From: Dendrobates tinctorius
Lineage: Eukaryota
Reading direction: 5' to 3'
Length of the DNA: 64,000 nucleotides
NCBI RefSeq assembly: GCF_039654945.1
Contig: NW_027362008.1
Location: 4,030,001 to 4,094,000 of the forward strand
The notes beneath the pieces are model-generated. The model was given only the letters and a program-made list of their open reading frames with translations, was not told the origin of the DNA and searched no databases. The translations under genes and the position numbers were made by a program. Shown here one piece after another: positions 13,257 to 61,565 of this stretch. The stretch's first letter is position 1, and each line of letters opens with the position of its first letter.

Positions 13257-13475
13257 CCAATGACAATATCCCACTAATTAACAACCCCCTGCTCTTCCCA
13301 GATATAAACTGTTTCCTCCTCTCAGTGACATCTACTTCACTCCAGGTATTATTTGTGGTCAGAACTGGCCTCTGAGGAGCATCAAGCTGTAGACTTGTTG
13401 GTGTACAGGAGGAGTTCAGCACCGACTATCATCTCTTTCAGTAGCAGTAGACATCTTCAATCTCCATCTACAAAG
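13257..13475 (+). promoter_or_regulatory. Putative kinase promoter (CCAAT, TATA) and non-coding exon 1, copy 1
   Basis: CCAAT at 13257, TATAAA at 13303-13308, donor CAAAG|gtgaat at 13475/13476, acceptor ttttattcag|A at 13695/13696 one base before the ATG. The spliced context aagaATGG is a good Kozak. Confidence 0.6.
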
Positions 13476-13696
13476 GTGAATATATGATAAGTATAGCACA
13501 GCATATAGTAGATGGTATTACTGCAGATCCCTGGGGAATTATGCAATGCTGGAACATTATTACAGTGACTGCACACTATTATACAATTGTGCATTTCTAG
13601 TCGCAGTTTACACGAGGTGATTACAGTATGTTATTATGGGTCTCAAAGATGTTTCATGCTTTATTCAATGCCATATCTCATTTCATTTTATTCAGA

Positions 13697-15346
13697 ATGG
13701 CCACCAACATCAAGGAAGCAAGCAAGAACACGGCAAAACACCTTCTTCATCTGATATCAGAAACTTCCAAGAACCTGAAGATGATGGAAGTGACTGACCA
13801 CTTTGAACTTTTGCTAGAACTTGGGACTGGATCTTTTGGAAATGTACACATGGGAAAACACAAACATTCAGGTGAGATGATGATGATGGATGATGACTAT
13901 GAAGATGACTGAGCCATCAGGGTGGTTTTAGATGAATGTGAAAGATGAAATTGAAATCTGCTTGTACCCTGACAAACTGTACTTGTTAACAATCATTAAG
14001 TATCACCCTAGTTGTATCCTATCTACAACGTGTCATTAGTATTCTGCACCACTACCCTCTAGTCTTATGAATGCTCCTGTGTAAAGTGATTGATCAGGTT
14101 GTTTATATGGTTTTAAAAGTGTTATGGAATATGATGAGGATGAACATTAACAATTATAATGTTTATTCAACAGGACAGACCGTGGCAATTAAAATGATGG
14201 CAAAGAAGAAGACTCCAGAAGACAACTTCTTTCTGGAATATTGCATTTCACAAACCCTCAGCATCCATCGGAACATCATATTTACTCACGACATCTTCTT
14301 CCATACCAGTAGGGATTTTGTGTTTGTTCAGGAAGTGGCACCGGCCGGAAATCTCCAGTCCATCCTTGTACCTAAAGTAAGATCTTAAGCTGTTCTCCAC
14401 TTTTACATATTCAAGCATTATTCATACTGCTGAAGAAAAAAATTAGTGGTCTTTATTGTAGATCTGACATCTAACATTACCCTATTTCCTCAGATTTAAT
14501 AAACTCATATTTCTGTAAGTAGCAGTATGGGACCCCCATAATTAGGCAGGTTTAGGTTGTATGAGTATGTGTGAGCTAGTAAAATCCTCTATGTGAGAGA
14601 TATTTAATTTTTAGTGGAAATCTCGCATTATAGAGGATATCTGATTAATAGCAGAGTAGAACTGATGTCTGCAGGAATTATATCTACTAGTAGAAGATAT
14701 CTATAAGTCTTCTGTTCTTTTATATCAGATATGTTTTCCCTTCTGCTGTTCAGCTGTGTAATCTTCTGTGTTGTCTTTTTCTTAGGTCGGCATGCAGGAG
14801 GACATGTTGAAGCGTTGTGTTCCTCAGATCGCCAGTGCTCTGGACTTTATGCATAACAGAGGAATGGTTCATCGGGATATCAAGCCGAATAATATTCTTC
14901 TGATGGATGCAGAATGTCACTGGATAAAGCTGGCAGACTTTGGACTCACCAGGCTCCAGGGCACATTTGTTCCTTTTGTGCCCTGGTATAAACCCTACAC
15001 TGCTCCAGAGCTCTGCTGCCTTAGACCAGGAGAACAGTTGTTGCTACATCCTAGTCTTGATGTCTGGGCTTTTGGTGTAGTCATTTATTATGCTCTTTCT
15101 GGACTCTTTCCTTGGCATGGGGCAAAACGCGGTGATCGAGATTATAAAGAGTTTGCCTGGTGGCAGGTTGGAAGGGATCTGTCAAAAGCTCCAAAAAAGT
15201 GGAAGAAAATTTCAGTGGAGGCCAGAGTAATGTTCTGGGAACTGCTTCAAATAAATGCCTCTAAGAGAGGCTCGGCCATTGACATTCTAAAATTTATGCA
15301 CTTGCCATGGAAAGCCGAGGAATGTTCAGAGACCGAAGCAACCTGA
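13697..15346 (+). CDS. SBK1-like serine/threonine kinase (NKF1/SBK family), copy 1, 312 aa, intact
   Basis: Coding exons 13697-13871, 14174-14376 and 14786-15346. GT-AG introns (CAG|gtgaga..caacag|GA phase 1; AAA|gtaaga..tttcttag|GTC phase 0) give 939 nt in frame. Motifs: LGTGSFG, VAIK, alphaC Glu (FFLEY), HRDIKPNN, DFG, YTAPE, DVWAFG. QEVAPAGNL..PKVGMQED..KRC and FPW..D..Y.EF..WQ match SBK1 as recalled. Confidence 0.92.
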
Positions 15347-15437
15347 TATGTTGAATCTATGACAAACTGCAATATGATATTTGTTTTTTTAATCAATAAT
15401 GTCTACAAAGCAGACTGTGAACTATTGTAAATAGCTC

Positions 15438-15451
15438 AATAAATGAATAAA
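15438..15451 (+). terminator. Tandem AATAAA polyadenylation signals, kinase copy 1
   Basis: AATAAAtgAATAAA ~92 nt after the stop codon. Confidence 0.65.
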
Positions 15452-16467
15452 ACAGACTTGAATCTTACTAAAGTTTGTCTCGAGAAAAACAGAAAAAAAT
15501 ATAGAAGTTACGGGTATACGAACATGGGACACTCCCAAAACATTTTTTAAGTCAGTTTTTTTCATAAAAGTAACAAAACATAAAAAGTGATATAGAAAAG
15601 GAATTGTCATGGTATTGCTATTCACATTCTACATATTTCACATTGACATGCTTTAGCACTACAGAGTGCATCTTTTTTGTTTATTGAAAATGAAGGTAAC
15701 TGCAGCTAGTTGGCTCCTGTTCACATTAGCTTGGAAGTGCCAGTCTTTTTGTCACTAAAAAAATAATACTGGTACTTTATTCCCAAATTTGATAAATATG
15801 CTGAGCCTCCATCTTGCTATTTGCACTGGATATTATGCCCATTGGTTAAGAAAACTCCCTTGGTTATACAGGACTCAAGATTTTTTACAAATACAGGATG
15901 ATTTTGATTGACAAGCATTATTGCAGCTGGTGACAATCCTTGTGCTTTTGCTTTGCACACAATTCCTTTCAATTTGCAGGACCCTGGTATAACCAGGCAG
16001 CTGATACAGCAATGGATTCACCAGTTGCCGTGACTTGTATACTGTATATATTTTTTGGAGAAAGATACTTAATTTGAACAATCCATTTCTATTACATATC
16101 AAATTATTCTTACAATTTAAAGACAATATTCTTATAGTAAGAAGAGATGTGTCTTTTACTTTTTGGAAAGCATGCAGTAAAAAATAAAATCATTATGAGT
16201 CAGCACAAATTCTAATAATTTGAAAACAAAACTCTTGAGTGACTGAATATGATTGCCCTTTGTGCTCAAAAATATTTTACTGCCTGAGTTCCCAATTCAT
16301 AACAGATTCTGGTATAAAATGTCTCAATGTAAAGTCTCACTATCATTCTTGTGGGTGGCCAGGACTTCCAGCATCACCAGACCTCTGACTTCACTGTGCC
16401 TTTGTTGGGAAAAAACTTGGCACTCATAGTAAAATCAGAGGATTTTATATTTGAATTTATTTAACAT

Positions 16468-20382: not shown

Positions 20383-23300
20383 GAATCATAGAATCATAGA
20401 ATCATAGAATCATAGAATCGTAGAGTTGGAAGGGACCTCCTGGGCCATCTGGTCCAACCCCCTGCTCAAAGCAGGATTCGCTAAATCATCCCAGTCAGAT
20501 GTCTGTCCAGCCTCTGTTTGAAGACTTCCATTGAAGGAGAACTCACCACTTCTCGTGGCAGCCTGTTCCACTCATTGATCACTCTAACTGTCAAAAAGTT
20601 TTTTCTAATATCTAATCTGTGTCTCTTCCCATTCAGTTTCATCCCATTGCTTCTAGTCTTTCCTTGTGCAAATGAGAATAAAGTTGATCCTTCTACAATG
20701 TGACAGCCCTTTAGATATTTGTAGACAGCTATTAAGTCTCCTCTCAGTCTTCTCTTTTGCAAACTAAACATTCCCAAATCCTGCAACCTTTCCTCATAAG
20801 ACAGGGATTGCAGACCGGTCACCATTCTGGTCGCTCTTTTCTGAACTTGCTCCAGTTTGTTGATGTCTTTTTTAAAATGTGGTGCCCAAAACTGGACACA
20901 ATATTCCAGATGAGGTCTGACCAAAGAGGAGTAGAGGGAAATAATGACTTCACGTGATCTAGACTGTATGCTTCTGTTAATACATCCTAGAATTGCATTT
21001 GCCTTTTTTGCTGCTGCATCACACTGTTGACTCATTTTCAGTCTGTGATCTATTAGTATACCCAAGTCTTTTTCACATGTGCTGTCACTTAGCCCTATTC
21101 CTCCCATTCTATATATGCTTTTTTCATTTTTATTGCCCAGATGTAGTACTTTGCATTTCTCCCTGTTAAAAACCATTCTGTTAGTTGCTGCCCACTTCTC
21201 CAGTTTATTTAAATCTTTTTGAATCCTCTCTCTCTCTTCTCTAGTATTAGCTATCCCTCCTAGCTTTGTGTCATCAGCAAATTTAATCAGTTTACCCTCA
21301 ATTCCTTCATCTAAATCGTTGATAAAGATGTTGAACAATACAGGGCCCAGGACAGAGCCCTGTGGTACCCCACATGAGACATTCTTCCAACTGGATGTGC
21401 AGCCATTTACGACCACTCTTTGGGTCCGATCACTAAGCCAGTTATGAATCCACCTAACAGTTGCCTTGTCCATTCCATACTTAGTCATTTTTTCAATAAG
21501 GATTGTATGAGAGACTTTGTCAAATGCTTTGCTGAAGTCAAGATATACTATATCTACAGCATTTCCTTGATCCACCCAATCAGTGATACCGTCATAGAAG
21601 GAAATTAAGTTAGTCTGACATGACTTATTAGTTAGAAACCCATGCTGACTCTGTTTAATCACTTCATTCTTATCCAGGTATTGACATACAAGTTGTTTAA
21701 TAATTTGTTCAAAGATCTTTCCTGGTATAGAAGTCAGACTCACCGGCCTATAGTTGCCTGGGTCCACCTTCTTCCCCTTTTTGAAGATAGGAACAACATT
21801 TGCTCTTCTCCAGTCTTCTGGCACTTCTCCTGTTCTCCAAGAATTTTCAAAGATTATGGAGAGGGGTTCAAAAATTTCTTCTGCTATCTCCTTCAGTACT
21901 CTGGGGTGTAATTCATCTGGACCTGGAGACTTGAATTCATTTAGGTTAGCTAACTGTTTCCTCACTATCTTTCTGTTTATAGATATCCTGGATTCTTCTA
22001 TTCCCTTAATAGGACAGTGAATAACAGTTGATGTTGCATTTCCTTTCTGAGAGAAAGCAGATGCAAAATAGGAATTTAAAAGTTCAGCCTTCTCAACATC
22101 CTGTCTTACCATTTCATCATTTTCATCCTGTAAAAATCCTATAGCATCTTTGACTTTTCTTTTACTTTTGACATATCCCCAAAATCCTTTATTATTGCTT
22201 TTGACATCTCTTGCAAGCCTCAGTTCATTTTCAGCTTTAGCTAATCTGATTTGTGCCCTGCAGGTTCTGCAGACAGCATTATATTCTTCTTTAGATATGC
22301 CTCCCTCTTTCCATTTTATAAACATTTTTTTCTTCCTTTTAGCATGTGCTTAAGTTCTGTGTTCATCCATCCTGGTTTCCTTAAATGCTTCCTATTCTTC
22401 CCTCTTTTCGGAATTGTTAACAACTGTGCTTTGAGAATTTCATTTTTCAAGATTTCCCATCCTTCCTGGACATTTTTGTCTTTAAGGATATCCAGCCATT
22501 GGATCCCTCCAATTCTCTTTCTGAATCCCTTAAAATCTGCCTTTCTGAAATCTAACCTTGACGTCTGAGTCTTCACAGGTCTTCCACCTCTAGTAATCCA
22601 AAATTCTAAAATAGCATGGTCGCTACCTCCTAGGGTCCCAGCCACTTTTACCTCCTCAACCATTTCCTCCCTGTTTATAAGGATTAGATCCAAGGTAGCA
22701 GTTCCCCTTGTTTTCTCCCTTACCTTTTGGAAGATAAAGTTGTCAGCAAGAGAGGATAAGAATTTCCTTGACCTGTTAGTTTTGCCTGAGAGAGATTCCC
22801 AACAAATGTCTGGATAGTTGAAATCTCCCATGACAACTATGTCATATTTTTTGGAGAACTTGGCCATCTGATGCATAAAGAGTTCATCTATATCTTTGGC
22901 TTGCACAGGCGGCCTGTAGTAAATGCCTACAATGGTGTCCTTTCCATTGTTCTGTCCTTGTATTCTTACGCAAACAGTTTCCACAGAACTCCCAGTCTCT
23001 GAAGCTTCAATCTCTGTGCAGATATACGCGTTTCGAACATACAATGCGACACCCCCTCCTCGTTTATCAAGTCTGTTTCTTGCAAATAAGTTGTATCCTT
23101 CTAGTCTTGTATTCCAATCATGTGTATTGTCCCACCAAGTTTCAGTGATTCCAATTACATCATATTTCTGCTCCTGTGTTAGTAGTTCCAATTCTCCTTG
23201 TTTGTTGCCCATGCTTTGTGCATTAGTATAGAAACATTTTAGTTTGTGATTGGTTTCTCTTTCTCCAATATTTTTATTAATTAGATTCTTTCGTCTTTGT

Positions 23301-23390
23301 TCTTCCTTTCCACTTCTAATAGAAGAGTTCTCAATAGCATTTGTCAGGTGTATGGCTTTTTCTGGTCTTTTGCTTCCCTTCCCATGTTGT
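20383..23390 (-). mobile_element. CR1-A LINE, near-complete ORF2 with a 1-bp frameshift
   Basis: ORFs 22316-23488 (EN) and 20481-22325 (RT). Tail x4. No ORF1 or 5'UTR recognised. Confidence 0.94.
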
Positions 23391-23435
23391 TCTTGAGAAA
23401 TTGAGAATAATATAATAGAAAAAATGTCTTTGTAA

Positions 23436-23815
23436 GGCTGTGTGCCCACATTGCGCTTTTTCAGAGTTTCCGTGGTGATTTTAAACAAGTGATTCTGCCG
23501 CTGAAATGCTTAAGAAAATCATTCCATGTTATCATAATTGATTCCGCACATGTTGTGCTAATGGTGCGTATTTTACCGCTGCGGAATTGCTTAGCGGTAA
23601 AAAACACAGAATGTTCATTAATTTTGTGGAATCGCATGCGATTATGCATACATACACTTGTATTGCAAAAGCGCATAGGAAATCGCATGTTAAAACATAT
23701 GACAAATGCATCAAAATTGCTAAAATCTTCAAAACTGCATGCGTTTTTCCAGCTAAGGGTGTGCGTTTCTCCTCAGGAATATTCTACTTCAAAACTGCAA
23801 TGTGGGCACATAGCC
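23436..23815. mobile_element. Harbinger-like MITE copy
   Basis: Same TIRs. Confidence 0.78.
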
Positions 23816-24220
23816 TGAAAGTGGCTTTTCTATCCTCTAGTCTGAGTAGATGGCTGTAATTTTTCATTCTGACGTTTGATCCATCATATGATTTTCACTC
23901 TGTTCCAGAGTGAAATTGTATTTTCCTCTTTGGTTGTTTTGTAAAAACTCAACATCAATTTTTACAATTATGGTTCTTTCATTTGCTCCCTTATATAAAT
24001 GTATATTTCTCTACTTCTGTACTGTGGCTGCTAAGAAGAATTTACAATATACTGCGTTTGTTCTGCGCAATTGAAATACATTCTCGCCTTTATGCCATGT
24101 GGAAATCACATTCCTGATTTTAGCCATGTATGTCTTCACTTGTAATTCATTTACGTTAATTAGATATGTTAATTGTCTTTCACTAGTGTTCAGCATATTA
24201 GTGCTTTCTCGAACAATGCC

Positions 24221-24268
24221 TGTTATCATGACTAAGGGTGCTGGGACACCTGAAACGCGTTGATAACA
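24221..24268 (+). ncRNA. Hammerhead-like motif copy
   Basis: Identical to 2970-3017. Confidence 0.62.
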
Positions 24269-25477
24269 CAATCTTATGTACCATTCATGCTGATATTTTA
24301 TCTATTCACATCTGAGTGAATAAAGAATTTGTGTTTTCACTTCTGGATCATGGCTTTTTTGTTACATTAGCCATACCTTTCTTTTCTGGGCAATATAGAT
24401 GTAAAAGTGTTTTTTAAGTATCAGTTATATTTGTCAATACACTTTTTAAGTGGAACTTATTAGCATGATTTTATAAGCACTTTTTTGCAAGAGAAATAAA
24501 GAAAACAGTAATTTTAACATTTATTTGTAGTTTAAAGTTTGTGTTATCTGATTTGCTGAAAAAATAAAGCAGTAACTGCATTCAGTAGGTCAGTACTAAT
24601 ATGGTGCTGGTAAATTTGTATAATCTTAATTGTTTTTTATGTTTTGTACAATATACACTTTAAAAAAAACCCATTTTTATACTGTTTTACAATTTTTTGT
24701 TAGTGGCGTGGTATGAAGATTTATTTTTGCCTGAAAATCTGTAGCTTTTGTTGTTAACAGTTTGTTGTACATGCAACTTTTTGATCACTTTTACATTATT
24801 TAGGAGGCAAAATGAAAGAAAAACACGTAAATTCTGAATTTGTTTTAATATTTTTTTAAACCCCAGTCACTGTTGGGTATAACTGTCGTGGTATCTTTAT
24901 TTGGTGGACGATATCATCACCATATTCTCATAAACTTCACTTATTTATTTTTCGGTTTATTGTAGGTGACGCTGATTGAGGCTTTGTTTTTGGTTATATA
25001 TGCCTTTCTAGTTATTATTTATCTCATTGTTTTGCTGGGAAGCAGAAACAAACAGCTATGAATTGGAAATAGTTGTTATTTTTATGGAGTTCGTCCAGCA
25101 GTATAATTGACATGATTACTTTATTCTGTGTGCTGATATGATTATGTTCATATCTAAGAAAATCACAATACATTTTTTATAGCTGTCACATTGTGAGTCA
25201 ATGCTTTGTATTTTTCTGACTGCAGATCTGTATGAGGACATGTTTTTGGGTAACAAACTAGTTATTTTGGTATAGCATCGGGATACATGATTTTTTAATT
25301 CAGTTTTTTAGTGAGGTAAGATGAACAAGAATAGCAAGTTTAGCAGTTTCTCACTTTTCCCCTCATACGGCATTGATCATGCACAATAAATGATAAGATT
25401 GTTTTATAACATGGGTCAGATCAGCAAAATTCAAAATCGCTTAACTGTTTGGATTTTCCCAATTAATTTGATTTTCA

Positions 25478-39520: not shown

Positions 39521-39563
39521 TTGAGAAATTGAGAATAATATAATAGAAAAAATGTCTTTGTAA

Positions 39564-48318: not shown

Positions 48319-48334
48319 ATCCCAGTACTTAAAA

Positions 48335-48748: not shown

Positions 48749-49914
48749 TACGTTTGAAAATCCACCAGGCTTCCCTATTTTGTAATGTAACCTCCGTATC
48801 ACCCCCTCTGATGGGTGTGTGTATTTTTTCAATTGCATACACCAGAAGTGTTTTCAGGTCATCTTTATGACATTCAATAAAATGTTTTGACACCTGAGAT
48901 GTGTTCCTTTCCATGTTAATATTCTCTGTGTCATAGATGTGTTCCCCAATTCTTTTCTTCAGCTTGCGTTTTGTGCTTCCAACATGTTTTAGATGGCAGA
49001 AGGTGCACTCCATAATATATACCAAGGTTTTAGTGCTACAATTGATAAAGGTTTTAGTAGCAAAATTCTTGCTTTCACTAGAATCTCCAAAGCTAGAGCT
49101 CTCTTTAGTGTATTTACAGGACTTAGCGCCACACTTATAAAAACCCTTGGTTTTCTGCCAATTTGTGGATTGAATTTGAGACATATTCAAAAAACTTGGC
49201 AAAAGGCTCTGACCTAAAGATGGTGCTCTCCTAGAGTCTATTCTAAATCCTTTCCCTATAATACTATCTATATCTGGATCCTCTTTTAATACAGATAAAT
49301 TATTTTGAATAATTCGTTCAATAGAGGCAAACTGGTTACTACACTGCGAGACCAATGTTACAGGAGTGACTGAATGTTCATGTGTGTTACACTTAGGTTT
49401 GAATCGCGGTTTTTGAGCCACAATGTTTTCAGCTTTGCTTAAACTCCATTGGGTATAACCCCTTTGGGTCAATCGCTGCTTAATGTTAGAAACTTCCTGT
49501 TGATAATCTGTATTTGTGCTACAATTGCATTTAGCTCTTGTCATCTCCCCAACAGGTATACTTTTAATTGTATGTTTAGGATGATGGCTTTTTCCATGGA
49601 GTATAGCATTGCCTGCTGTGTTCTTTCTAAATTTTTGTGTTACTACAGGTTTACCTGAAATTCCTTGTAAAATCAAATAAAAAAAATCAATGCATGAAAT
49701 TTTATGGCGGACCACAAATTTTAAATTCAAGGGATTGCAATTAATATAAAAATTAAAATCCTGTATGGCAGATACATCAGAATTCCAGATGATAATGATA
49801 TCATCTATGTATCTGCCTTACCAATAGACACAATCTTTAAATGGATTATTTACAGTATAAATATACAGCTCTTCCCACCAGCTCATTACCAAGTGAAATT
49901 AGCAAGTGAAGTTG
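48749..49914 (-). mobile_element. Decayed Penelope-like RT/GIY-YIG fragment, copy 3 (331-aa open frame)
   Basis: ORF 48735-49730. Has CGA where the other copies have TGA. Confidence 0.88.
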
Positions 49915-50371: not shown

Positions 50372-53300
50372 GAATCATAGAATCATAGAATCATAGAATC
50401 ATAGAATCGTAGAGTTGGAAGGGACCTCCTGGGCCATCTGGTCCAACCCCCTGCTCAAAGCAGGATTCGCTAAATCATCCCAGTCAGATGTCTGTCCAGC
50501 CTCTGTTTGAAGACTTCCATTGAAGGAGAACACACCACTTCTCGTGGCAGCCTGTTCCACTCATTGATCACTCTAACTGTCAAAAAGTTTTTTCTAATAT
50601 CTAATCTGTGTCTCCTCCCATTCAGTTTCATCCCATTGCTTCTAGTCTTTCCTTGTGCAAATGAGAATAAAGTTGATCCTTCTACAATGTGACAGCCCTT
50701 TAGATATTTGTAGACAGCTATTAAGTCTCCTCTCAGTCTTCTCTTTTGCAAACTAAACATTCCCAAATCCTGCAACCTTTCCTCATAAGACAGGGATTGC
50801 AGACCGGTCACCATTCTGGTCGCTCTTTTCTGAACTTGCTCCAGTTTGTTGATGTCTTTTTTAAAATGTGGTGCCCAAAACTGGACACAATATTCCAGAT
50901 GAGGTCTGACCAAAGAGGAGTAGAGGGAAATAATGACTTCACGTGATCTAGACTGTATGCTTCTGTTAATACATCCTAGAATTGCATTTGCCTTTTTTGC
51001 TGCTGCATCACACTGTTGACTCATTTTCAGTCTGTGATCTATTAGTATACCCAAGTCTTTTTCACATGTGCTGTCACTTAGCCCTATTCCTCCCATTCTA
51101 TATATGCTTTTTTCATTTTTATTGCCCAGATGTAGTACTTTGCATTTCTCCCTGTTAAAAACCATTCTGTTAGTTGCTGCCCACTTCTCCAGTTTATTTA
51201 AATCTTTTTGAATCCTCTCTCTCTCTTCTCTAGTATTAGCTATCCCTCCTAGCTTTGTGTCATCAGCAAATTTAATCAGTTTACCCTCAATTCCTTCATC
51301 TAAATCGTTGATAAAGATGTTGAACAATACAGGGCCCAGGACAGAGCCCTGTGGTACCCCACATGAGACATTCTTCCAACTGGATGTGCAGCCATTTACG
51401 ACCACTCTTTGGGTCCGATCACTAAGCCAGTTATGAATCCACCTAACAGTTGCCTTGTCCATTCCATACTTAGTCATTTTTTCAATAAGGATTGTATGAG
51501 AGACTTTGTCAAATGCTTTGCTGAAGTCAAGATATACTATATCTACAGCATTTCCTTGATCCACCCAATCAGTAATACCATCATAGAAGGAAATTAAGTT
51601 AGTCTGACATGACTTATTAGTTACAAACCCATGCTGACTCTGTTTAATCACTTCATTCTTATCCAGGTATTGACATACAAGTTGTTTAATAATTTGTTCA
51701 AAGATCTTTCCTGGTATAGAAGTCAGACTCACCGGCCTATAGTTGCCTGGGTCCACCTTCTTCCCCTTTTTGAAGATAGGAACAACATTTGCTCTTCTCC
51801 AGTCTTCTGGCACTTCTCCTGTTCTCCAAGAATTTTCAAAGATTATGGAGAGGGGTTCAAAAATTTCTTCTGCTATCTCCTTCAGTACTCTGGGGTGTAA
51901 TTCATCTGGACCTGGAGACTTGAATTCATTTAGGTTAGCTAACTGTTTCCTCACTATCTTTCTGTTTATAGATATCCTGGATTCTTCTATTCCCTTAATA
52001 GGACAGTGAATAACAGTTGATGTTGCATTTCCTTTCTGAGAGAAAGCAGATGCAAAATAGGAATTTAAAAGTTCAGCCTTCTCAACATCCTGTCTTACCA
52101 TTTCATCATTTTCATCCTGTAAAAATCCTATAGCATCTTTGACTTTTCTTTTACTTTTGACATATCCCCAAAATCCTTTATTATTGCTTTTGACATCTCT
52201 TGCAAGCCTCAGTTCATTTTCAGCTTTAGCTAATCTGATTTGTGCCCTGCAGGTTCTGCAGACAGCATTATATTCTTCTTTAGATATGCCTCCCTCTTTC
52301 CATTTTATAAACATTTTTTTCTTCCTTTTAGCATGTGCTTAAGTTCTGTGTTCATCCATCCTGGTTTCCTTAAATGCTTCCTATTCTTCCCTCTTTTCGG
52401 AATTGTTAACAACTGTGCTTTGAGAATTTCATTTTTCAAGATTTCCCATCCTTCCTGGACATTTTTGTCTTTAAGGATATCCAGCCATTGGATCCCTCCA
52501 ATTCTCTTTCTGAATCCCTTAAAATCTGCCTTTCTGAAATCTAACCTTGACGTCTGAGTCTTCACAGGTCTTCCACCTCTAGTAATCCAAAATTCTAAAA
52601 TAGCATGGTCGCTACCTCCTAGGGTCCCAGCCACTTTTACCTCCTCAACCATTTCCTCCCTGTTTATAAGGATTAGATCCAAGGTAGCAGTTCCCCTTGT
52701 TTTCTCCCTTACCTTTTGGAAGATAAAGTTGTCAGCAAGAGAGGATAAGAATTTCCTTGACCTGTTAGTTTTGCCTGAGAGAGATTCCCAACAAATGTCT
52801 GGATAGTTGAAATCTCCCATGACAACTATGTCATATTTTTTGGAGAACTTGGCCATCTGATGCATAAAGAGTTCATCTATATCTTTGGCTTGCACAGGCG
52901 GCCTGTAGTAAATGCCTACAATGGTGTCCTTTCCATTGTTCTGTCCTTGTATTCTTACGCAAACAGTTTCCACAGAACTCCCAGTCTCTGAAGCTTCAAT
53001 CCCTGTGCAGATATACGCGTTTCGAACATACAATGCGACACCCCCTCCTCGTTTATCAAGTCTGTTTCTTGCAAATAAGTTGTATCCTTCTAGTCTTGTA
53101 TTCCAATCATGTGTATTGTCCCACCAAGTTTCAGTGATTCCAATTACATCATATTTCTGTTCCTGTGTTAGTAGTTCCAATTCTCCTTGTTTGTTGCCCA
53201 TGCTTTGTGCATTAGTATAGAAACATTTTAGTTTGTGATTGGTTTCTCTTTCTCCAATATTTTTATTAATTAGATTCTTTCGTCTTTGTTCTTCCTTTCC

Positions 53301-53380
53301 ACTTCTAATAGAAGAGTTCTCAATAGCATTTGTCAGGTGTATGGCTTTTTCTGGTCTTTTGCTTCCCTTCCCATGTTGTT
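50372..53380 (-). mobile_element. CR1-A LINE, near-complete ORF2 with a 1-bp frameshift
   Basis: ORFs 52305-53477 and 50470-52314. Tail x4. Confidence 0.94.
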
Positions 53381-53424
53381 CTTGAGAAATTGAGAATAAT
53401 ATAATAGAAAAAATGTCTTTGTAA

Positions 53425-53804
53425 GGCTGTGTGCCCACATTGCGCTTTTTCAGAGTTTCCGTGGTGATTTTAAACAAGTGATTCTGCCGCTGAAATGCTT
53501 AAGAAAATCATTCCATGTTATCATAATTGATTCCGCACATGTTGTGCTAATGGTGCGTATTTTACCGCTGCGGAATTGCTTAGCGGTAAAAAACACAGCA
53601 TGTTCATTAATTTTGTGGAATCGCATGCGATTATGCATACATACACTTGTATTGCAAAAGCGCATAGGAAATCGCATGTTAAAACATATGACAAATGCAT
53701 CAAAATTGCTAAAATCTTCAAAACTGCATGCGTTTTTCCAGCTAAGGGTGTGCGTTTCTCCTCAGGAATATTCTACTTCAAAACTGCAATGTGGGCACAT
53801 AGCC
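53425..53804. mobile_element. Harbinger-like MITE copy
   Basis: Same TIRs. Confidence 0.78.
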
Positions 53805-54209
53805 TGAAAGTGGCTTTTCTATCCTCTAGTCTGAGTAGATGGCTGTAATTTTTCATTCTGACGTTTGATCCATCATATGATTTTCACTCTGTTCCAGAGT
53901 GAAATTGTATTTTCCTCTTTGGTTGTTTTGTAAAAACTCAACATCAATTTTTACAATTATGGTTCTTTCATTTGCTCCCTTATATAAATGTATATTTCTC
54001 TACTTCTGTACTGTGGCTGCTAAGAAGAATTTACAATATACTGCGTTTGTTCTGCGCAATTGAAATACATTCTCGCCTTTATGCCATGTGGAAATCACAT
54101 TCCTGATTTTAGCCATGTATGTCTTCACTTGTAATTCATTTACGTTAATTAGATATGTTAATTGTCTTTCACTAGTGTTCAGCATATTAGTGCTTTCTCG
54201 AACAATGCC

Positions 54210-54257
54210 TGTTATCATGACTAAGGGTGCTGGGACACCTGAAACGCGTTGATAACA
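54210..54257 (+). ncRNA. Hammerhead-like motif copy
   Basis: Identical to 2970-3017. Confidence 0.62.
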
Positions 54258-55466
54258 CAATCTTATGTACCATTCATGCTGATATTTTATCTATTCACAT
54301 CTGAGTGAATAAAGAATTTGTGTTTTCACTTCTGGATCATGGCTTTTTTGTTACATTAGCCATACCTTTCTTTTCTGGGCAATATAGATGTAAAAGTGTT
54401 TTTTAAGTATCAGTTATATTTGTCAATACACTTTTTAAGTGGAACTTATTAGCATGATTTTATAAGCACTTTTTTGCAAGAGAAATAAAGAAAACAGTAA
54501 TTTTAACATTTATTTGTAGTTTAAAGTTTGTGTTATCTGATTTGCTGAAAAAATAAAGCAGTAACTGCATTCAGTAGGTCAGTACTAATATGGTGCTGGT
54601 AAATTTGTATAATCTTAATAGTTTTTTATGTTTTGTACAATATACACTTTAAAAAAAAACCATTTTTATACTGTTTTACAATTTTTTGTTAGTGGCGTGG
54701 TATGAAGATTTATTTTTGCCTGAAAATCTGTAGCTTTTGTTGTTAACAGTTTGTTGTACATGCAACTTTTTGATCACTTTTACATTATTTAGGAGGCAAA
54801 ATGAAAGAAAAACACGTAAATTCTGAATTTGTTTTAATATTTTTTTAAACCCCAGTCACTGTTGGGTATAACTGTCATGGTATCTTTATTTGGTGGACGA
54901 TATCATCACCATATTCTCATAAACTTCACTTATTTATTTTTCGGTTTATTGTAGGTGACGCTGATTGAGGCTTTGTTTTTGGTTATATATGCCTTTCTAG
55001 TTATTATTTATCTCATTGTTTTGCTGGGAAGCAGAAACAAACAGCTATGAATTGGAAATAGTTGTTATTTTTATGGAGTTCGTCCAGCAGTATAATTGAC
55101 ATGATTACTTTATTCTGTGTGCTGATATGATTATGTTCATATCTAAGAAAATCACAATACATTTTTTATAGCTGTCACATTGTGAGTCAATGCTTTGTAT
55201 TTTTCTGACTGCAGATCTGTATGAGGACATGTTTTTGGGTAACAAACTAGTTATTTTGGTATAGCATCGGGATACATGATTTTTTAATTCAGTTTTTTAG
55301 TGAGGTAAGATGAACAAGAATAGCAAGTTTAGCAGTTTCTCACTTTTCCCCTCATACGGCATTGATCATGCACAATAAATGATAAGATTGTTTTATAACA
55401 TGGGTCAGATCAGCAAAATTCAAAATCGCTTAACTGTTTGGATTTTCCCAATTAATTTGATTTTCA

Positions 55467-57752
55467 TAGAATCATAGAATCATAGAATCGTAGAGTTGGA
55501 AGGGACCTCCTGGGCCATCTGGTCCAACCCCCTGCTCAAAGCAGGATTCGCTAAATCATCCCTGTTAGATGTCTGTCCAGCCTCTGTTTGAAGACTTCCA
55601 TTGAAGGAGAACTCACCACTTCTCGTGGCAGCCTGTTCCACTCATTGATCACTCTAACTGTCAAAAAGTTTTTTCTAATATCTAATCTGTGTCTCCTCCC
55701 ATTCAGCTTCATCCCATTGCTTCTAGTCTTTCCTTGTGCAAATGAGAATAAAGTTGATCCTTCTACAATGTGACAGCCCTTTAGATATTTGTAGACAGCT
55801 ATTAAGTCTCCTCTCAGTCTTCTCTTTTGCAAACTAAACATTCCCAAATCCTGCAACCTTTCCTCATAAGACAGGGTTTGCAGACCGGTCACCATTCTGG
55901 TCGCTCTTTTCTGAACTTGCTCCAGTTTGTTGATGTCTTTTTTAAAATGTGGTGCCCAAAATTGGACACAATATTCCAGATGAGGTCTGACCAAAGAGGA
56001 GTAGAGGGAAATAATTACTTCACGTGATCTAGACTGTATGCTTCTGTTAATACATCCTAGAATTGCATTTGCCTTTTTTGCTGCTGCATCACACTGTTGA
56101 CTCATATTCAGTCTGTGATCTATTAGTATACCCAAGTCTTTTTCACATGTGCTGTCACTTAGCCCTATTCCTCCCATTCTATATATGCTTTTTTCATTTA
56201 TATTGCCCAGATGTAGTACTTTGCATTTCTCCCTGTTAAAAACCATTCTGTTAGTTGCTGCCCACTTCTCCAGTTTATTTAAATCTTTTTGAATCCTCTC
56301 TCTCTCTTCTCTAGTATTAGCTATCCCTCCTAGCTTTGTGTCATCAGCAAATTTAATCAGTTTACCCTCAATTCCTTCATCTAAATCGTTGATAAAGATG
56401 TTGAACAATACAGGGCCCAGGACAGAGCCCTGTGGTACCCCACTTGAGACATTCTTCCAACTGGATGTGCAGCCATTTACGACCACTCTTTGGGTCCGAT
56501 CACTAAGCCAGTTATGAATCCACCTAACAGTTGCCTTGTCCATTCCATACTTAGTCATTTTTTCAATAAGGATTGTATGAGAGACTTTGTCAAATGCTTT
56601 GCTGAAGTCAAGATATACTATATCTACAGCATTTCCTTGATCCACCCAATCAGTGATACCGTCATAGAAGGAAATTAAATTAGTCTGACCTGACTTATTA
56701 TTTACAAACCCATGCTGACTCTGTTTAATCACTTCATTCTTATCCAAGTATTGACATACATGTTGTTTAATAATTTGTTCAAAGATCTTTCCTGGTATAG
56801 AAGTCAGACTCACCGGCCTATAGTTGCCTGGGTCCACCTTCTTCCCCTTTTTGAAGATAGGAACAACATTTGCTCTTCTCCAGTCTTCTGGCACTTCTCC
56901 TATTCTCCAAGAATTTTCAAAGATTATGGAGAGGGGTTCAAAAATTTCTTCTGCTATCTCCTTCAGTACTCTGGGGTGTAATTCATCTGGACCTGGAGAC
57001 TTGAATTCATTTAGGTTAGCTAACTGTTTCCTCACTATCTTTCTGTTTATAGATATCCTGGATTCTTCTATTCCCTTAATAGGACAGTGAATAACAGTTG
57101 ATGTTACATTTCCTTTCTGAGAGAAAACAGATGCAAAATAGGAATTTAAAAGTTCAGCCTTCTCAACATCCTGTCTTACCATTTCATCATTTTCATCCTG
57201 TAAAAATCCTATAGCATCTTTGACTTTTCTTTTACTTTTGACATATCCCCAAAATCCTTTATTATTGCTTTTGACATCTCTTGCAAGTCTCAATTCATTT
57301 TCAGCTTTAGATAATCTGATTTGTGCCCTGCAGGTTCTGCAGACAGCATTATATTCTTCTTTAGATATGCCTCCCTCTTTCCATTTTATAAACATTTTTT
57401 TCTTCCTTTTTAGCATGTGCTTAAGTTCTGTGTTCATCCATCCTGGTTTCCTTAAATGCTTCCTATTCTTCCCTCTTTTCGGAATTGTTAACAACTGTGC
57501 TTTGAGAATTTCATTTTTCAAGATTTCCCATCCTTCCTGGACATTTTTGTCTTTAAGGATATCCAGCCATTGGATCCCTCCAATTCTCTTTCTGAATCCC
57601 TTAAAATCTGCCTTTCTGAAATCTAACGTTGACGTCTGAGTCTTCACAGGTCTTCCGCCTCTAGTTATCCAAAATTCTAAAATAGCATGGTCGCTACCTC
57701 CTAGGGTCCCAGCCACTTTTACCTCCTCAACCATTTCCTCCCTGTTTATAAG
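55467..57752 (-). mobile_element. CR1-B LINE, 5'-truncated, TSD GATTTTCA
   Basis: ORF 55551-57734. TSD at 55459-55466 and 57753-57760. Tail x3. Confidence 0.95.
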
Positions 57753-59371
57753 GATTTTCAGAGAAGTTATTCTCCATGAATTGAGTATCGCTGATTATGT
57801 ACTGGAATCTCTCCATGCTGATATTTTATCGTCTTTTCAAATCTGAGTGAACAAAGAATTTGTTTTTTCACTTCATCGTTAAGCTAGGTCATCTCTTTTT
57901 TGGATTTTTTTATTCCAAGACATGGCAGTTCTGTGCTCAGAGCTTCATGATCTATTAACGCTGTGAGATGGATTGTTTTATATGTCTAATGTAACGCAAC
58001 AAGTATAAAAATGTTTTATAGTGAAGGTCAAAACTGGCTCCAGTATGTAACAATAAAGCTCATAAAGCTAAATTTATAAACCTTTCCAAAAATAAAATGA
58101 GATTGGCGTACAAAATCAGCTCATCAAATAAGGAAATTCTCCCATTACACTAAAAATAAATTTGCAGAAACTGGTACATGACCTGTACCCATAGCGGTGC
58201 CATTTACTTGGTGGAAAGGGATGAAATTAAAAATAAAATCATTTGAGTCAACTAAACATCCAATAATATTTTAAAACAAACCTGTTTTGTGACTAAAAAC
58301 AGATCTGCTCATCTCTCATCAGTACATGGGTGGTAGAGGTTAGCAGTGAAACAATAGAAATTTATTTAGATGCATTTACATTGTTACATGATATGAATAC
58401 AGTTATGTTAGATGTCTTGTGACTACAGGTAAATGTTCTTTACCCAATTTAATAAAAAAATCTACTTACATCCAAATCTTCATTTCACTTGACCAAATAG
58501 TGAGATGTTGATGTAATTATCCTTTACAGAAACCTCTTGATTATGTCTTCTGCTGACATACTCACACTTTTTAAAGACATGTTTTTATTCAATATTGGCT
58601 CGTTCACCCGTCTTAATCTAAAGTCACTGGATGCTTCTATAATTAAATGTAAATAAAAAAAAAGAAGGGGTTACCAGATATGAAGATGCTATGCTACTGT
58701 GAAAGTAACGTGGCAAATGCATTTCCAGTAGATGTAAAAACAGTAAATTTCTGAAGATCATAAAAAAATAGACATCAATCAGCTATAAAAAGCTAACACA
58801 TGTATTACATTCTTCAATATGTTGTACACTTGGACGGGATGGCCATGGGGGTGGCATTCACGCCAAATAAGTATCAACACAATATCTCAGTGCAATTTTG
58901 CACATCTTTAATATTGTATAAAATATAGAAAGCCACTTCTACTAGATGTCTAATAGCATGTAAATGAAGACTGTTATAGCTCCCATTTACATGAATTACA
59001 CACGTATATACAAGATGTATGAAGCATGGAACACCTTACTATATTAATAAATAATACAATTGAGCAATTTGAAGCAAACACTGCACTCAGCAGCTATTAA
59101 TCAGGTAATCATAGCAGTGGCCCTAACAATTTCAATACCATGGTCATTGCATATTTTAGAAATTTTGTCTCTTGACTTCATGAAACTATCATGAAATAAT
59201 ACAATGAATAACATTTCTCTCTTTAGTTTACCTAATTATCAGCACAATGGTGAATAGTATCACAGGGCACCACAGGAAATTTCTATCCCTTTGTGTTGTC
59301 CCAAACCAGCATTCTCCCTGGAGAGATTTATAAATGTCAGTTTATATGTAAATGGAGACAGTAAGTCTTGG

Positions 59372-59590
59372 CCAATGACAATATCCCACTAATTAACAAC
59401 CCCCTGCTCTTCCCAGATATAAACTGTTTCCTCCTCTCAGTGACATCTACTTCACTCCAGGTATTATTTGTGGTCAGAACTGGCCTCTGAGGAGCATCAA
59501 GCTGTAGACTTGTTGGTGTACAGGAGGAGTTCAGCACCGACTATCATCTCTTTCAGTAGCAGTAGACATCTTCAATCTCCATCTACAAAG
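59372..59590 (+). promoter_or_regulatory. Putative kinase promoter and non-coding exon 1, copy 4
   Basis: Copy of 13257-13475. Confidence 0.58.
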
Positions 59591-59811
59591 GTGAATATAT
59601 GATAAGTATAGCACAGCATATAGTAGATGGTATTACTGCAGATCCCTGGGGAATTATGCAATGCTGGAACATTATTACAGTGACTGCACACTATTATACA
59701 ATTGTGCATTTCTAGTCGCAGTTTACACAAGGTGATTACAGTATGTTATTATGGGTCTCAAAGATGTTTCATGCTTTATTCAATGCCATATCTCATTTCA
59801 TTTTATTCAGA

Positions 59812-61460
59812 ATGGCCACCAACATCAAGGAAGCAAGCAAGAACACGGCAAAACACCTTCTTCATCTGATATCAGAAACTTCCAAGAACCTGAAGATGAT
59901 GGAAGTGACTGACCACTTTGAACTTTTGCTAGAACTTGGGACTGGATCTTTTGGAAATGTACACATGGGAAAACACAAACATTCAGGTGAGATGATGATG
60001 ATGGATGATGACTATGAAGATGACTGAGCCATCAGGGTGGTTTTAGATGAATGTGAAAGATGAAATTGAAATCTGCTTGTACCCTGACAAACTGTACTTG
60101 TTAACAATCATTAAGTATGACCCTAGTTGTATCCTATCTACAACGTGTCATTAGTATTCTGCACCACTACCCTCTAGTCTTATGAATGCTCCTGTGTAAA
60201 GTGATTGATCAGGTTGTTTATATGGTTTTAAAAGTGTTATGGAATATGATGAGGATGAACATTAACAATTATAATGTTTATTCAACAGGACAGACCGTGG
60301 CAATTAAAATGATGGCAAAGAAGAAGACTCCAGAAGACAATTTCTTTCTGGAATATTGCATTTCACAAACCCTCAGCATTCATCGGAACATCATATTTAC
60401 TCACGACATCTTCTTCCATACCAGTAGGGATTTTGTGTTTGTTCAGGAAGTGGCACCGGCCGGAAATCTCCAGTCCATCCTTGTACCTAAAGTAAGATCT
60501 TAAGCTGTTCTCCACTTTTACATATTCAAGCATTATTCATACTGCTGAAGAAAAAAATTAGTGGTCTTTATTGTAGATCTGACATCTAACATTACCCTAT
60601 TTCCTCAGATTTAATAAACTCATATTTCTGTAAGTAGCAGTATGGGAACCCATAATTAGGCAGGTTTAGGTTGTATGAGTATGTGTGAGCTAGTAACATC
60701 CTCTATGTGAGAGATATTTAATTTTTAGTGGAAATCTCACATTATAGAGGATATCTGATTAATAGCAGAGTAGAACTGATGTCTGCAGGAATTATATCTA
60801 CTAGTAGAAGATATCTATAAGTCTTCTGTTCTTTTATATCAGATATGTTTTCCCTTCTGCTGTTCAGCTGTGTAATCTTCTGTGTTGTCTTTTTCTTAGG
60901 TCGGCATGCAGGAGGACATGTTGAAGCGTTGTGTTCCTCAGATCGCCAGTGCTCTGGACTTTATGCATAACAGAGGAATGGTTCATCGGGATATCAAGCC
61001 GAATAATATTCTTCTGATGGATGCAGAATGTCACTGGATAAAGCTGGCAGACTTTGGACTCACCAGGCTCCAGGGCACATTTGTTCCTTTTGTGCCCTGG
61101 TATAAACCCTACACTGCTCCAGAGCTCTGCTGCCTTAGACCAGGAGAACAGTTGTTGCTACATCCTAGTCTTGATGTCTGGGCTTTTGGTGTAGTCATTT
61201 ATTATGCTCTTTCTGGACTCTTTCCTTGGCATGGGGCAAAACGCGGTGATCGAGATTATAAAGAGTTTGCCTGGTGGCAGGTTGGAAGGGATCTGTCAAA
61301 AGCTCCAAAAAAGTGGAAGAAAATTTCAGTGGAGGCCAGAGTAATGTTCTGGGAACTGCTTCAAATAAATGCCTCTAAGAGAGGCTCGGCCATTGACATT
61401 CTAAAATTTATGCACTTGCCATGGAAAGCCGAGGAATGTTCAGAGACCGAAGCAACCTGA
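59812..61460 (+). CDS. SBK1-like serine/threonine kinase, copy 4, 312 aa, intact
   Basis: Exons 59812-59986, 60289-60491 and 60900-61460. The protein is identical to copy 1. Confidence 0.92.
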
Positions 61461-61551
61461 TATTTTGAATCTATGACAAACTGCAATATGATATTTGTTT
61501 TTTTAATCAATAATGTCTACAAAGCAGACTGTGAACTATTGTAAATAGCTC

Positions 61552-61565
61552 AATAAATGAATAAA
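61552..61565 (+). terminator. Tandem AATAAA signals, kinase copy 4
   Basis: Same as copy 1. Confidence 0.62.

What the first reader, a model, noticed from the sequence alone, without database searches (positions are those of the whole stretch)
13257..61565. Young tandem gene-amplification array of a divergent SBK1-like kinase
Seen: four near-identical copies of a compact 312-aa kinase gene, each with promoter-like elements, intact splice sites and polyA signals, in 14-16 kb units that continue past both window ends. Known: canonical SBK1 is a conserved gene with a longer C-terminal tail. This protein is essentially a bare catalytic domain and is strongly diverged from SBK1. Inference: a lineage-specific SBK-like paralog family under active birth-and-death or dosage amplification. 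That pattern is typical of germline/ampliconic, immune or genetic-conflict genes. The function is unknown from sequence alone.
Basis: partly seen in the sequence, partly recalled or inferred. Interest (0 to 1): 0.8.

Follow-up and report, generated by a model that had tools for sequence, protein, structure and literature searches.

The report
Young tandem array of frog SBK-like kinase genes
The dyeing poison frog carries about twenty head-to-tail, almost identical copies of a small active-looking protein kinase gene; the array is real and recent, but the gene family exists across amphibians, is already annotated, and its function remains unknown.

Summary
The window is Dendrobates tinctorius scaffold JAYMGB010000340.1:4030001-4094000. 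It holds four head-to-tail units (16,164 / 13,825 / 16,126 bp, 99.2-99.7% identical). Each unit carries a three-coding-exon, 312-aa kinase gene plus CR1-type LINE copies.

The array is far larger than the window: about 300 kb (3.98-4.28 Mb), at least 18 units and 17 RefSeq "SBK1-like" proteins. Thirteen core copies differ by 0.1-0.5%; the copies at the edges are older (0.7-9%).

It has a stop at codon 70 (TAG, 30370-30372).

The protein is not the SBK1 orthologue. It belongs to a separate, fast-evolving SBK-family clade found in frogs and the axolotl. Paralogues cluster by species, and multicopy loci also occur in Ranitomeya, Phyllobates and Pelobates, so the family is not Dendrobates-specific.

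All catalytic motifs are kept. dN/dS is 0.2-0.4 between genera, and synonymous sites outnumber non-synonymous ones even among the young copies (7 vs 4). The copies are therefore constrained and probably functional.

No RNA evidence could be obtained, so tissue and function remain open. The scan noted the same array in neighbouring windows (s1-362249, s1-389154). Verdict: a real, tidy, moderately interesting example of a known kind.

The parts
13257..15451 (+). Kinase gene copy 1 (scaffold position 4043697). Putative 5' non-coding exon about 13257-13476; CDS exons 13697-13871, 14174-14376, 14786-15346; AATAAA at 15438-15443 and 15446-15451. Encodes P0001 (312 aa).
   Evidence: Pfam Pkinase on exon 3, 97.1 bits
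29861..31510 (+). Kinase gene copy 2. CDS exons 29861-30035, 30338-30540, 30950-31510. Disrupted by a premature stop, TAG at 30370-30372 (K70*).
43686..45335 (+). Kinase gene copy 3. CDS exons 43686-43860, 44163-44365, 44775-45335. Encodes variant P0044 (F296C).
59812..61460 (+). Kinase gene copy 4. CDS exons 59812-59986, 60289-60491, 60900-61460. Encodes P0001 with two synonymous differences from copy 1.
1..11612 (-). CR1-type LINE block (endonuclease + reverse transcriptase ORFs) arranged as a 5,088-bp tandem sub-repeat. It belongs to the 21,250-bp unit that begins before the window.
20386..27775 (-). LINE block of the unit that starts at copy 1, about 1.45 sub-repeat copies. ORFs 20481-22325 (RT), 22316-23488 (endonuclease) and 25570-27753 (5'-truncated copy).
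36524..41610 (-). LINE block of the short 13,825-bp unit: a single sub-repeat copy, lacking the 2.3-kb second LINE piece.
50375..57756 (-). LINE block of the unit that starts at copy 3, about 1.45 sub-repeat copies.
48735..49730 (-). Unclassified ORF repeated once per unit (also 18746-19483 and 34890-35627). No Pfam family; a Penelope-like origin is only a suspicion.
41225..41653 (.). Left arm of a ~430-bp inverted repeat that brackets the kinase cassette. Right arm is 48319-48748; the arms are 88-94% complementary.
48319..48748 (.). Right arm of the same inverted repeat, abutting the end of the unclassified ORF.

Best explanation
This is a genuine, recently expanded tandem gene array. A ~16-kb unit consists of one compact SBK-family serine/threonine kinase gene, CR1-type LINE copies and other repeats. 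It has been multiplied head-to-tail to at least 18 units over ~300 kb of D. tinctorius scaffold JAYMGB010000340.1.

The likely engine is unequal crossing-over between misaligned units. The 5,088-bp LINE sub-repeat inside each unit adds or removes pieces, which would explain unit lengths of 11,075, 16,16x and 21,250 bp. The same process keeps the central copies nearly identical, while the copies at the two edges escape homogenisation and diverge.

The gene belongs to an old, amphibian-wide, fast-evolving branch of the SBK family that is multicopy in many species. The D. tinctorius core is the latest round of turnover, not the birth of a new family.

The encoded 312-aa protein is predicted to be an active kinase without regulatory tails. 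Most copies are kept under purifying selection, so the array most probably serves high dosage of one kinase. I infer expression in a restricted tissue or stage, with the germline as the first guess.

Shown: the array, its age structure, intact catalytic motifs, selective constraint and phylogenetic placement. Inferred: the unequal-crossover mechanism, dosage as the selected trait, and the tissue.
For: Array and its extent:
- Self-BLAST of the window.
- Nine loci encode exactly P0001 and eight variant proteins lie on the same scaffold, spanning 3,980,114-4,279,480.
- The window's position was verified by identity to L003 and L009.

Age structure:
- Thirteen core copies differ by 1-5 substitutions per kb.
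- Edge copies differ by 7-9, ~30, ~34 and ~87 substitutions per kb.

Unit-length variants differ by exactly 5,088 bp, the LINE sub-repeat.

The LINE copies are present in every D. tinctorius unit, including the edge units, but absent within 10 kb of the orthologues in Ranitomeya and Phyllobates. The present units therefore descend from one LINE-bearing ancestral unit that arose after those genera split.

Kinase integrity:
- Pfam Pkinase, 97 bits.
- Invariant G43/G45/G48, K65, E80, H155-R156-D157, N162, D177-F178-G179, P200-E201 and R287.

Selective constraint:
- dN/dS is 0.22-0.25 against Ranitomeya and 0.36-0.39 against Phyllobates.
- Core copies show 7 synonymous vs 4 non-synonymous variable sites, binomial P = 0.003-0.015 against neutrality. 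All 17 copies show 19 vs 28, P = 0.002.

Phylogeny:
- The array clade has SH-aLRT 98 and canonical SBK1 has SH-aLRT 100 as a separate clade.
- Paralogues cluster by species.

Multicopy loci in other frogs: accession runs and loci.
Against: - No transcript evidence. The only runs available were contigs from relatives at 90-95% likeness or of uncertain type, and none showed a splice joint.
- Copy number rests on a single HiFi assembly. Read depth could not be measured, so the exact number of core copies may be wrong.
- One of the four window copies is a nonsense pseudogene, and another array member is an N-terminally truncated model, so not all copies contribute.
- The constraint seen among core copies could partly reflect older variation shuffled by gene conversion.
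- The trees are quick-search trees with SH-aLRT only; the careful run did not finish.
- A 52.6-kb stretch (4,199,073-4,251,693) has no protein model on record and was not examined.
Confidence: 0.78

Rival explanations
1. Assembly artefact: a single-copy or few-copy locus was wrongly expanded, or haplotypes were stacked, by the assembler.
For: Units are 99.2-99.9% identical. They are about as long as the HiFi reads used for this species' published assembly: libraries were sheared to ~19 kb and assembled with hifiasm (PMC11152451). Copy number was not checked by depth.
Against: Units carry private and shared substitutions and five different unit lengths. There is an orderly gradient from young core to old edges. 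Copies differ by a nonsense mutation and by amino-acid variants. A DNA-like run of another sample laid 389 contigs at 90-99% likeness on 2.5 kb, which suggests many variants. Related frogs assembled independently also have multicopy loci.
Confidence: 0.06
2. Passive segmental amplification without function. The TE-rich unit was multiplied by LINE-mediated recombination, the kinase gene is only a passenger, and most copies are silent and on the way to decay.
For: Each unit is more than 60% repeats, with LINE sub-repeats that clearly recombine. One nonsense copy and one truncated copy exist. No RNA evidence was found. In the 2.65-kb gene-region alignment of 11 copies, variable sites are nearly as frequent in coding sequence (7 in 939 nt) as in introns (7 in 711 nt).
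Against: There is an excess of synonymous over non-synonymous variable sites in the core and in the whole array. dN/dS is 0.15-0.35 between edge and core copies, although one pair shows 1 synonymous vs 7 non-synonymous differences. Sixteen of the 18 known copies keep the full 312-aa frame with all catalytic residues.
Confidence: 0.15
3. An ancient array maintained by concerted evolution alone. The locus has held many copies since early anurans, and the near-identity in D. tinctorius reflects continual gene conversion, not recent gain of copies.
For: Paralogues cluster by species or genus across the whole anuran tree, in Pelobates, Ranitomeya species, Ambystoma and ranids. Identical proteins lie 155 kb apart in Pelobates. 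The loci sit 6-10 Mb from a chromosome end in Pelobates, Ranitomeya and Aquarana, which is compatible with one old locus.
Against: Homogeneity covers the entire 16-kb unit, including LINE insertions that are absent near the Ranitomeya and Phyllobates genes. That fits duplication of whole units better than short-tract conversion. Phyllobates units are 8.2 kb apart and are built differently. Ranids keep at least three older sublineages shared between genera. Orthology of the loci was not tested with flanking genes.
Confidence: 0.3

Closest known systems
Canonical vertebrate SBK1 (SH3-domain-binding kinase 1)
   Same: Same kinase family. About 41% identity to frog SBK1 over the catalytic domain. 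Catalytic motifs are shared, and the automatic RefSeq name is 'SBK1-like'.
   Different: It forms a separate clade. It has no C-terminal tail (312 vs 392/415 aa). Frog SBK1 is almost invariant across frogs (branch lengths about 0.01), whereas the array family has branch lengths of 0.1-0.4. The array family is multicopy. The P+1 loop reads PWY, SWC or SRF instead of SGT.
SBK2 / SBK3 (short, heart- and muscle-enriched SBK paralogues of amniotes; PMC12217965, PMC7438927)
   Same: Short proteins that are little more than a kinase domain. In the 101-row tree the array clade is sister to the clade holding bird SBK3, with SH-aLRT 95.
   Different: Frogs (Hyla, Dendropsophus) have a separate gene inside that SBK3-like clade, so the array family is an additional lineage. 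The sister relation fell to SH-aLRT 83 in the smaller tree. Nothing is known about array-gene expression.
Ampliconic or tandemly amplified gene families (for example sex-chromosome ampliconic genes of mammals; named from general knowledge)
   Same: Many head-to-tail units more than 99% identical, intact ORFs in most copies, TE-rich spacers, unit-length variants from unequal exchange, and decayed copies among intact ones.
   Different: No evidence here of sex linkage, palindromes or germline expression. Gene-wide dN/dS is well below 1.
SBK1-like multicopy loci of other frogs (RefSeq models in Ranitomeya, Phyllobates, Pelobates, Aquarana, Rana, Lithobates)
   Same: Same clade and same three-exon structure. 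Proteins are 307-324 aa. Several to many near-identical copies sit on one chromosome.
   Different: Unit content differs. The CR1 LINE copies and the 16-kb unit are specific to D. tinctorius. Phyllobates copies lie 8.2 kb apart.

Membership tests
Eukaryotic protein kinase superfamily (Pfam PF00069) | Kinase domain profile match above the curated threshold | tested here: met
   Exon 3 alone scores 97.1 bits against a cut-off of 31.7. Exon 2 matches profile positions 25-89.
Eukaryotic protein kinase superfamily (Pfam PF00069) | Catalytic residues: Gly-rich loop, VAIK Lys, alpha-C Glu, HRD, DFG, APE | tested here: met
   G43/G45/G48, K65, E80, H155-R156-D157, N162, D177-F178-G179 and P200-E201 are invariant in a 16-sequence alignment.
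SBK (SH3-binding kinase, NKF1) family | Closest relatives by sequence are SBK1/2/3, and it groups with them in a tree | tested here: met
   All named hits down to 35% identity are SBK1, SBK2 or SBK3, with E-values of 1e-62 to 1e-86. The trees contain only SBK-family clades, and no outgroup kinase was included.
Canonical SBK1 orthologue | Falls inside the SBK1 clade | tested here: not met
   The SBK1 clade (which includes Ranitomeya, Phyllobates and Anomaloglossus SBK1) has SH-aLRT 100 and excludes the array protein. The array clade has SH-aLRT 98.
Canonical SBK1 orthologue | Long C-terminal tail after the kinase domain | tested here: not met
   The protein ends about 12 residues after the conserved PWK motif, whereas frog SBK1 continues for about 90 more residues.
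Canonical SBK1 orthologue | Single copy and slowly evolving | tested here: not met
   At least 18 copies. It is 88% identical to the Ranitomeya protein, whereas SBK1 of Ranitomeya, Phyllobates and Anomaloglossus has zero branch length.
Ampliconic / tandemly amplified gene array | Many head-to-tail units at more than 99% identity | tested here: met
Ampliconic / tandemly amplified gene array | Most copies keep an intact reading frame under constraint | tested here: met
   Sixteen of the 18 known copies keep the full 312-aa frame; one is a nonsense copy and one is a 275-aa truncated model. Synonymous variable sites are in excess.
Ampliconic / tandemly amplified gene array | Restricted (typically germline) expression | not testable with these tools
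   No RNA run of this species was usable.
Ampliconic / tandemly amplified gene array | Copy-number variation between individuals or sexes | not tested
   Only contigs were available, with no depth information.
Concertedly evolving multigene family | Paralogues within a species are more alike than orthologues between species | tested here: met
   Species-specific clusters in D. tinctorius, the two Ranitomeya species, Phyllobates, Pelobates and Ambystoma. Within-array dS is at most 0.06, against 0.20-0.24 between genera.
Concertedly evolving multigene family | Same orthologous locus in the compared species | tested here: inconclusive
   The loci lie 6-10 Mb from a chromosome end in Pelobates, Ranitomeya and Aquarana, but flanking genes were not compared.

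The most novel reading that the evidence does not exclude
A catalytically intact protein kinase has been kept for the whole history of frogs (and perhaps of all amphibians) as a tandem array near a chromosome end that is repeatedly turned over and homogenised. Meanwhile its substrate-binding P+1 loop, the usual Gly-Thr, changes freely between lineages: PWY in poison frogs, SWC in toads, SRF/SRV/SFV elsewhere. That pattern would suit a dosage-dependent kinase locked in an arms race or germline conflict, with specificity evolving at a few sites under a gene-wide background of constraint.
Probability: 0.2. Interest if true: 0.65.

Novelty: new member of a known kind. Interest (0 to 1): 0.4.

Why it matters
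Tandem arrays of near-identical, still-constrained enzyme genes are uncommon in vertebrate autosomes. They usually mark strong dosage demand or genetic conflict.

This example gives a clean, datable case in a giant, TE-rich frog genome. It shows LINE-mediated unequal exchange building and resizing a gene array. It also points to an unstudied amphibian branch of the SBK kinases that evolves an order of magnitude faster than SBK1, judged by tree branch lengths.

The weight is limited. The genes are already annotated in RefSeq, the mechanism is familiar, and nothing is known about expression or substrate.

Tried and rejected
- RNA evidence. The look-up of sequencing runs listed no run on record as RNA that holds the stretch. 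The laid contigs were relatives at 90-95% likeness covering only exon 2 and exon 3, or a DNA-like run. No splice joints were seen and depth was unusable. Nothing can be said about expression or copy number from reads.
- Rfam at gathering thresholds found nothing in the window, so it gives no support for the hammerhead-like fold that other notes report in the units.
- Pfam on the repeated 245/331-aa minus-strand ORF gave no family, even at E-value 5. My impression of a Penelope-type GIY-YIG motif is therefore unverified.
- The careful IQ-TREE search did not finish within the time limit, so the quick tree with SH-aLRT support was used. No AU tests were run.
- Literature. Nothing was found on amphibian SBK1-like arrays, and one search was mis-specified and useless. 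The D. tinctorius genome paper does not mention kinases or tandem genes.
- Logan-derived short proteins P0010, P0012 and P0015 begin inside exon 3, so they cannot show splicing.
Exons were searched by reference. Full-length work used the database protein P0001, which equals the three exon translations.
- dN/dS and variable-site classes were computed exon by exon. The one codon split between exons 1 and 2 was left out.
- Structure prediction, complex prediction and the large representative search were not used, because family assignment was already clear.


Full report
**What is in the window**

The window has no gaps. Self-BLAST shows a tandem repeat whose units are 16,164, 13,825 and 16,126 bp long and 99.2-99.7% identical. 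The repeat runs off both ends of the window.

On the plus strand each unit carries the same three coding exons:
- Copy 1: 13697-13871, 14174-14376, 14786-15346.
- Copy 2: 29861-30035, 30338-30540, 30950-31510.
- Copy 3: 43686-43860, 44163-44365, 44775-45335.
- Copy 4: 59812-59986, 60289-60491, 60900-61460.

The exon lengths of 175, 203 and 561 nt give 312 codons. Donors are GT and acceptors are AG. Two AATAAA signals follow the stop by about 95 nt.

On the minus strand each unit carries CR1-type LINE sequence, with endonuclease and reverse-transcriptase ORFs (Pfam). This LINE sequence is itself a 5,088-bp tandem sub-repeat. Each unit also holds an unclassified 245-331-aa ORF. A ~430-bp inverted repeat brackets the kinase cassette.

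**Identity of the sequence**

A word search with exon 3 by reference returned a 312-aa RefSeq protein of Dendrobates tinctorius, "serine/threonine-protein kinase SBK1-like" (P0001), at 100% identity. The translations of exons 1, 2 and 3 of copy 1 equal residues 1-58, 60-126 and 127-312 of P0001, and the split codon reads GGA = G59.

I did not build or submit a joined spliced model. Exons were searched by reference, and full-length searches used the database entry P0001.

Loci L003 and L009 are identical to the window where they overlap. This places the window at JAYMGB010000340.1:4030001-4094000 of GCA_039654945.1.

**The whole array**

Nine genes on that 7.24-Mb scaffold encode exactly P0001, and eight further protein variants lie on the same scaffold (accessions XP_073418306-323).

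Their start positions are:
- 3,980,114 (P0045)
- about 3,990,863 (P0041, a 275-aa model)
- 4,011,372 and 4,022,447
- 4,043,697 (window copy 1)
- 4,059,861 (copy 2)
- 4,073,686 (copy 3 = P0044)
- 4,089,812 (copy 4)
- 4,105,975 (P0040)
- 4,117,051 (P0043)
- 4,133,213; 4,150,589; 4,166,745; 4,182,909; 4,199,073
- 4,251,693 (P0042)
- 4,265,486 (P0039)
- 4,279,480 (P0046)

The array therefore spans about 300 kb and at least 18 units. A 52.6-kb stretch between 4,199,073 and 4,251,693 has no recorded protein and was not examined.

Unit-like sequence continues beyond both edge genes. Unit lengths of 11,075, 16,16x and 21,250 bp differ by exactly one 5,088-bp LINE sub-repeat. Units of 13,825 and 17,376 bp also occur.

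**Age structure**

I compared a 6-kb gene-bearing segment across units. The 13 central copies differ by only 1-5 substitutions per kb. The copy at 4,265,486 differs from them by 7-9 per kb. The copies at 4,251,693 and 3,980,114 differ by about 30-35 per kb. The outermost copy, at 4,279,480, differs by about 87 per kb.

For scale, the same gene region is 84-90% identical between D. tinctorius and Ranitomeya or Phyllobates. The core copies are therefore roughly one thirtieth to one hundredth as diverged as the genera.

The LINE copies are present in all D. tinctorius units, including the edge units. They are absent within 10 kb of the orthologues in Ranitomeya and Phyllobates. All present units therefore descend from one LINE-bearing unit that arose after those lineages split.

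A young homogeneous core, older edges and unit-length steps equal to an internal repeat are what unequal crossing-over between misaligned units produces. That mechanism is inferred, not observed.

**Are the copies intact and constrained?**

Not all are. Window copy 2 has AAG>TAG at 30370-30372 (K70*), just after the VAIK lysine. P0041 is a model that starts inside intron 1. It lacks the glycine-rich loop and has a one-residue deletion.

The other 16 known copies keep the full 312-aa frame. Across 16 family members the alignment shows these residues as invariant: the Gly-loop glycines, K65, E80, the HRD and DFG motifs, N162, P200-E201 of the APE motif, and R287. The protein is therefore predicted to be catalytically active.

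Nei-Gojobori estimates were summed exon by exon, leaving out the split codon:
- dN/dS is 0.22-0.25 against two Ranitomeya species (dS 0.235).
- dN/dS is 0.36-0.39 against Phyllobates (dS 0.20).
- dN/dS is 0.15-0.35 between edge and core copies. One noisy exception shows 1 synonymous and 7 non-synonymous differences.

Among the 13 core copies there are 7 synonymous and 4 non-synonymous variable sites, although about 79% of sites are non-synonymous. The binomial P is 0.003, or 0.015 with a 72% expectation. Over all 17 copies with DNA the counts are 19 and 28, P = 0.002.

The copies are therefore under purifying selection, moderately relaxed for a kinase. There is no gene-wide sign of positive selection.

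**Phylogenetic placement**

A full-length search with P0001 found 851 relatives. The closest are "SBK1-like" proteins of 307-448 aa from all major frog lineages: dendrobatids at 81-88% identity, and bufonids, hylids, ranids, Pelobates, Ascaphus and Bombina at 50-75%. Ambystoma follows at 47%. Canonical SBK1, SBK3 and SBK2 lie at 35-45%.

I built two trees, of 101 and 49 proteins (quick search, SH-aLRT only). Their main results are:
- The frog and Ambystoma array-type proteins form one clade, with SH-aLRT 98.
- Canonical SBK1 forms another clade, with SH-aLRT 100. It includes Ranitomeya, Phyllobates and Anomaloglossus SBK1, and its branch lengths are about 0.01.
- An SBK3-like clade contains separate Hyla and Dendropsophus genes, so the array family is not the frog SBK3 either.
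- Relations among the major clades are weakly supported.
- Within the array clade the tree follows frog phylogeny, and paralogues cluster by species or genus.

Other species are multicopy too:
- Runs of consecutive accessions occur in Ranitomeya variabilis, R. imitator, Pelobates fuscus, Aquarana catesbeiana, Rana temporaria and Lithobates pipiens.
- Two genes lie 8.2 kb apart in Phyllobates.
- Identical proteins lie 155 kb apart in Pelobates.

The family is thus old and amphibian-wide, with recurrent within-species amplification or homogenisation. Only the present D. tinctorius expansion is lineage-specific.

**Function**

No direct evidence could be obtained. No run on record as RNA holds the stretch. 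The laid contigs were from relatives or were DNA-like, and they showed no splice joints. Searches of the open literature found nothing on these amphibian genes, and the genome paper does not discuss them.

My best inference has three parts:
- The protein is an active, unregulated SBK-type Ser/Thr kinase.
- Gene number is kept high for dosage.
- It is expressed in a restricted tissue or stage, with the germline as the first guess, by analogy with other near-identical arrays.

I give the tissue guess no more than about one chance in three.

One feature may bear on substrate choice. The Gly-Thr that precedes the P+1 loop in SBK1 (VSGTIPYTAPE) is replaced throughout the array clade, and the replacement varies between lineages: PWY, SWC, SRI, SRF, SWI, SFV, SRV, SCI.

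**Comparison with what is known, and verdict**

The genes are already annotated by RefSeq, and the mechanism, tandem amplification by unequal exchange in TE-rich DNA, is familiar. I could not find a family-level description in the literature of three points:
- a separate amphibian SBK clade;
- about 20-30 times faster protein change than SBK1, judged by branch lengths;
- multicopy status in many frogs, with species-wise clustering.

I rate the finding a new member of a known kind, with interest 0.4. Its interpretation is partly supported. The same array was also noted by the scan in the neighbouring windows (s1-362249, s1-389154).

Noticed in passing
window 30370-30372: Copy 2 of the kinase gene carries a premature TAG (K70*) in exon 2. 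No RefSeq protein in the cluster corresponds to this copy.
   Followed up: yes
window 14936-15010 (residues about 186-201 of P0001): The Gly-Thr before the P+1 loop of SBK1 (SGTIPYTAPE) is PWYKPYTAPE here. It differs in almost every frog lineage of the array clade (SWC, SRI, SRF, SWI, SFV, SRV, SCI), while the flanking DFG and APE motifs are invariant.
   Followed up: partly
window 1-11612, 20386-27775, 36524-41610, 50375-57756 (minus strand): CR1-type LINE copies with long open endonuclease and RT ORFs (up to 727 aa) form a 5,088-bp sub-repeat inside each unit. Array unit lengths of 11,075, 16,16x and 21,250 bp differ by exactly this amount. The 13,825-bp unit lacks only the 2.3-kb second LINE piece.
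   Followed up: partly
window 41225-41653 and 48319-48748: Inverted repeat of about 430 bp (88-94% complementary) brackets the kinase cassette. The right arm abuts the end of an unclassified 331-aa ORF that has no Pfam match.
   Followed up: partly
alignment A1 (P0048 Bufo, P0070 Ascaphus, P0073 Ambystoma): Longer members of the array clade share a conserved C-terminal end (…PSL(S/T)(I/V/L)GAE(V/L)E(I/L)T). The 312-aa dendrobatid proteins lack it, so the 'bare domain' form may be a secondary loss or an alternative 3' exon.
   Followed up: no
L011, L012, L017-L019 (Ranitomeya, Pelobates, Aquarana loci): The SBK1-like loci lie 6-10 Mb from a chromosome end in three chromosome-scale frog assemblies: 8.9 and 10.0 Mb of 1.17-1.25 Gb, 6.2-6.3 Mb of 388 Mb, and 982 of 992 Mb.
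   Followed up: no
cluster members P0163, P0168, P0174, P0178 (ranid RefSeq models): Proteins of 628-737 aa named 'ribosomal protein S6 kinase alpha-like' cluster at 90% identity with SBK1-like proteins. They are probably two adjacent array genes fused by automatic annotation.
   Followed up: no
whole window: Rfam at gathering thresholds finds no RNA family, so the hammerhead-like folds noted by other readers in these units do not reach any curated hammerhead model's threshold.
   Followed up: partly
window 13353-13487 and P0047 (Anomaloglossus, 393 aa): The RefSeq model of Anomaloglossus reads the homologue of the putative 5' non-coding exon as coding sequence (…LLVYRRSS…GHLQSLSV-MATHI). This is indirect support that the upstream exon is transcribed and spliced to the ATG exon.
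   Followed up: no
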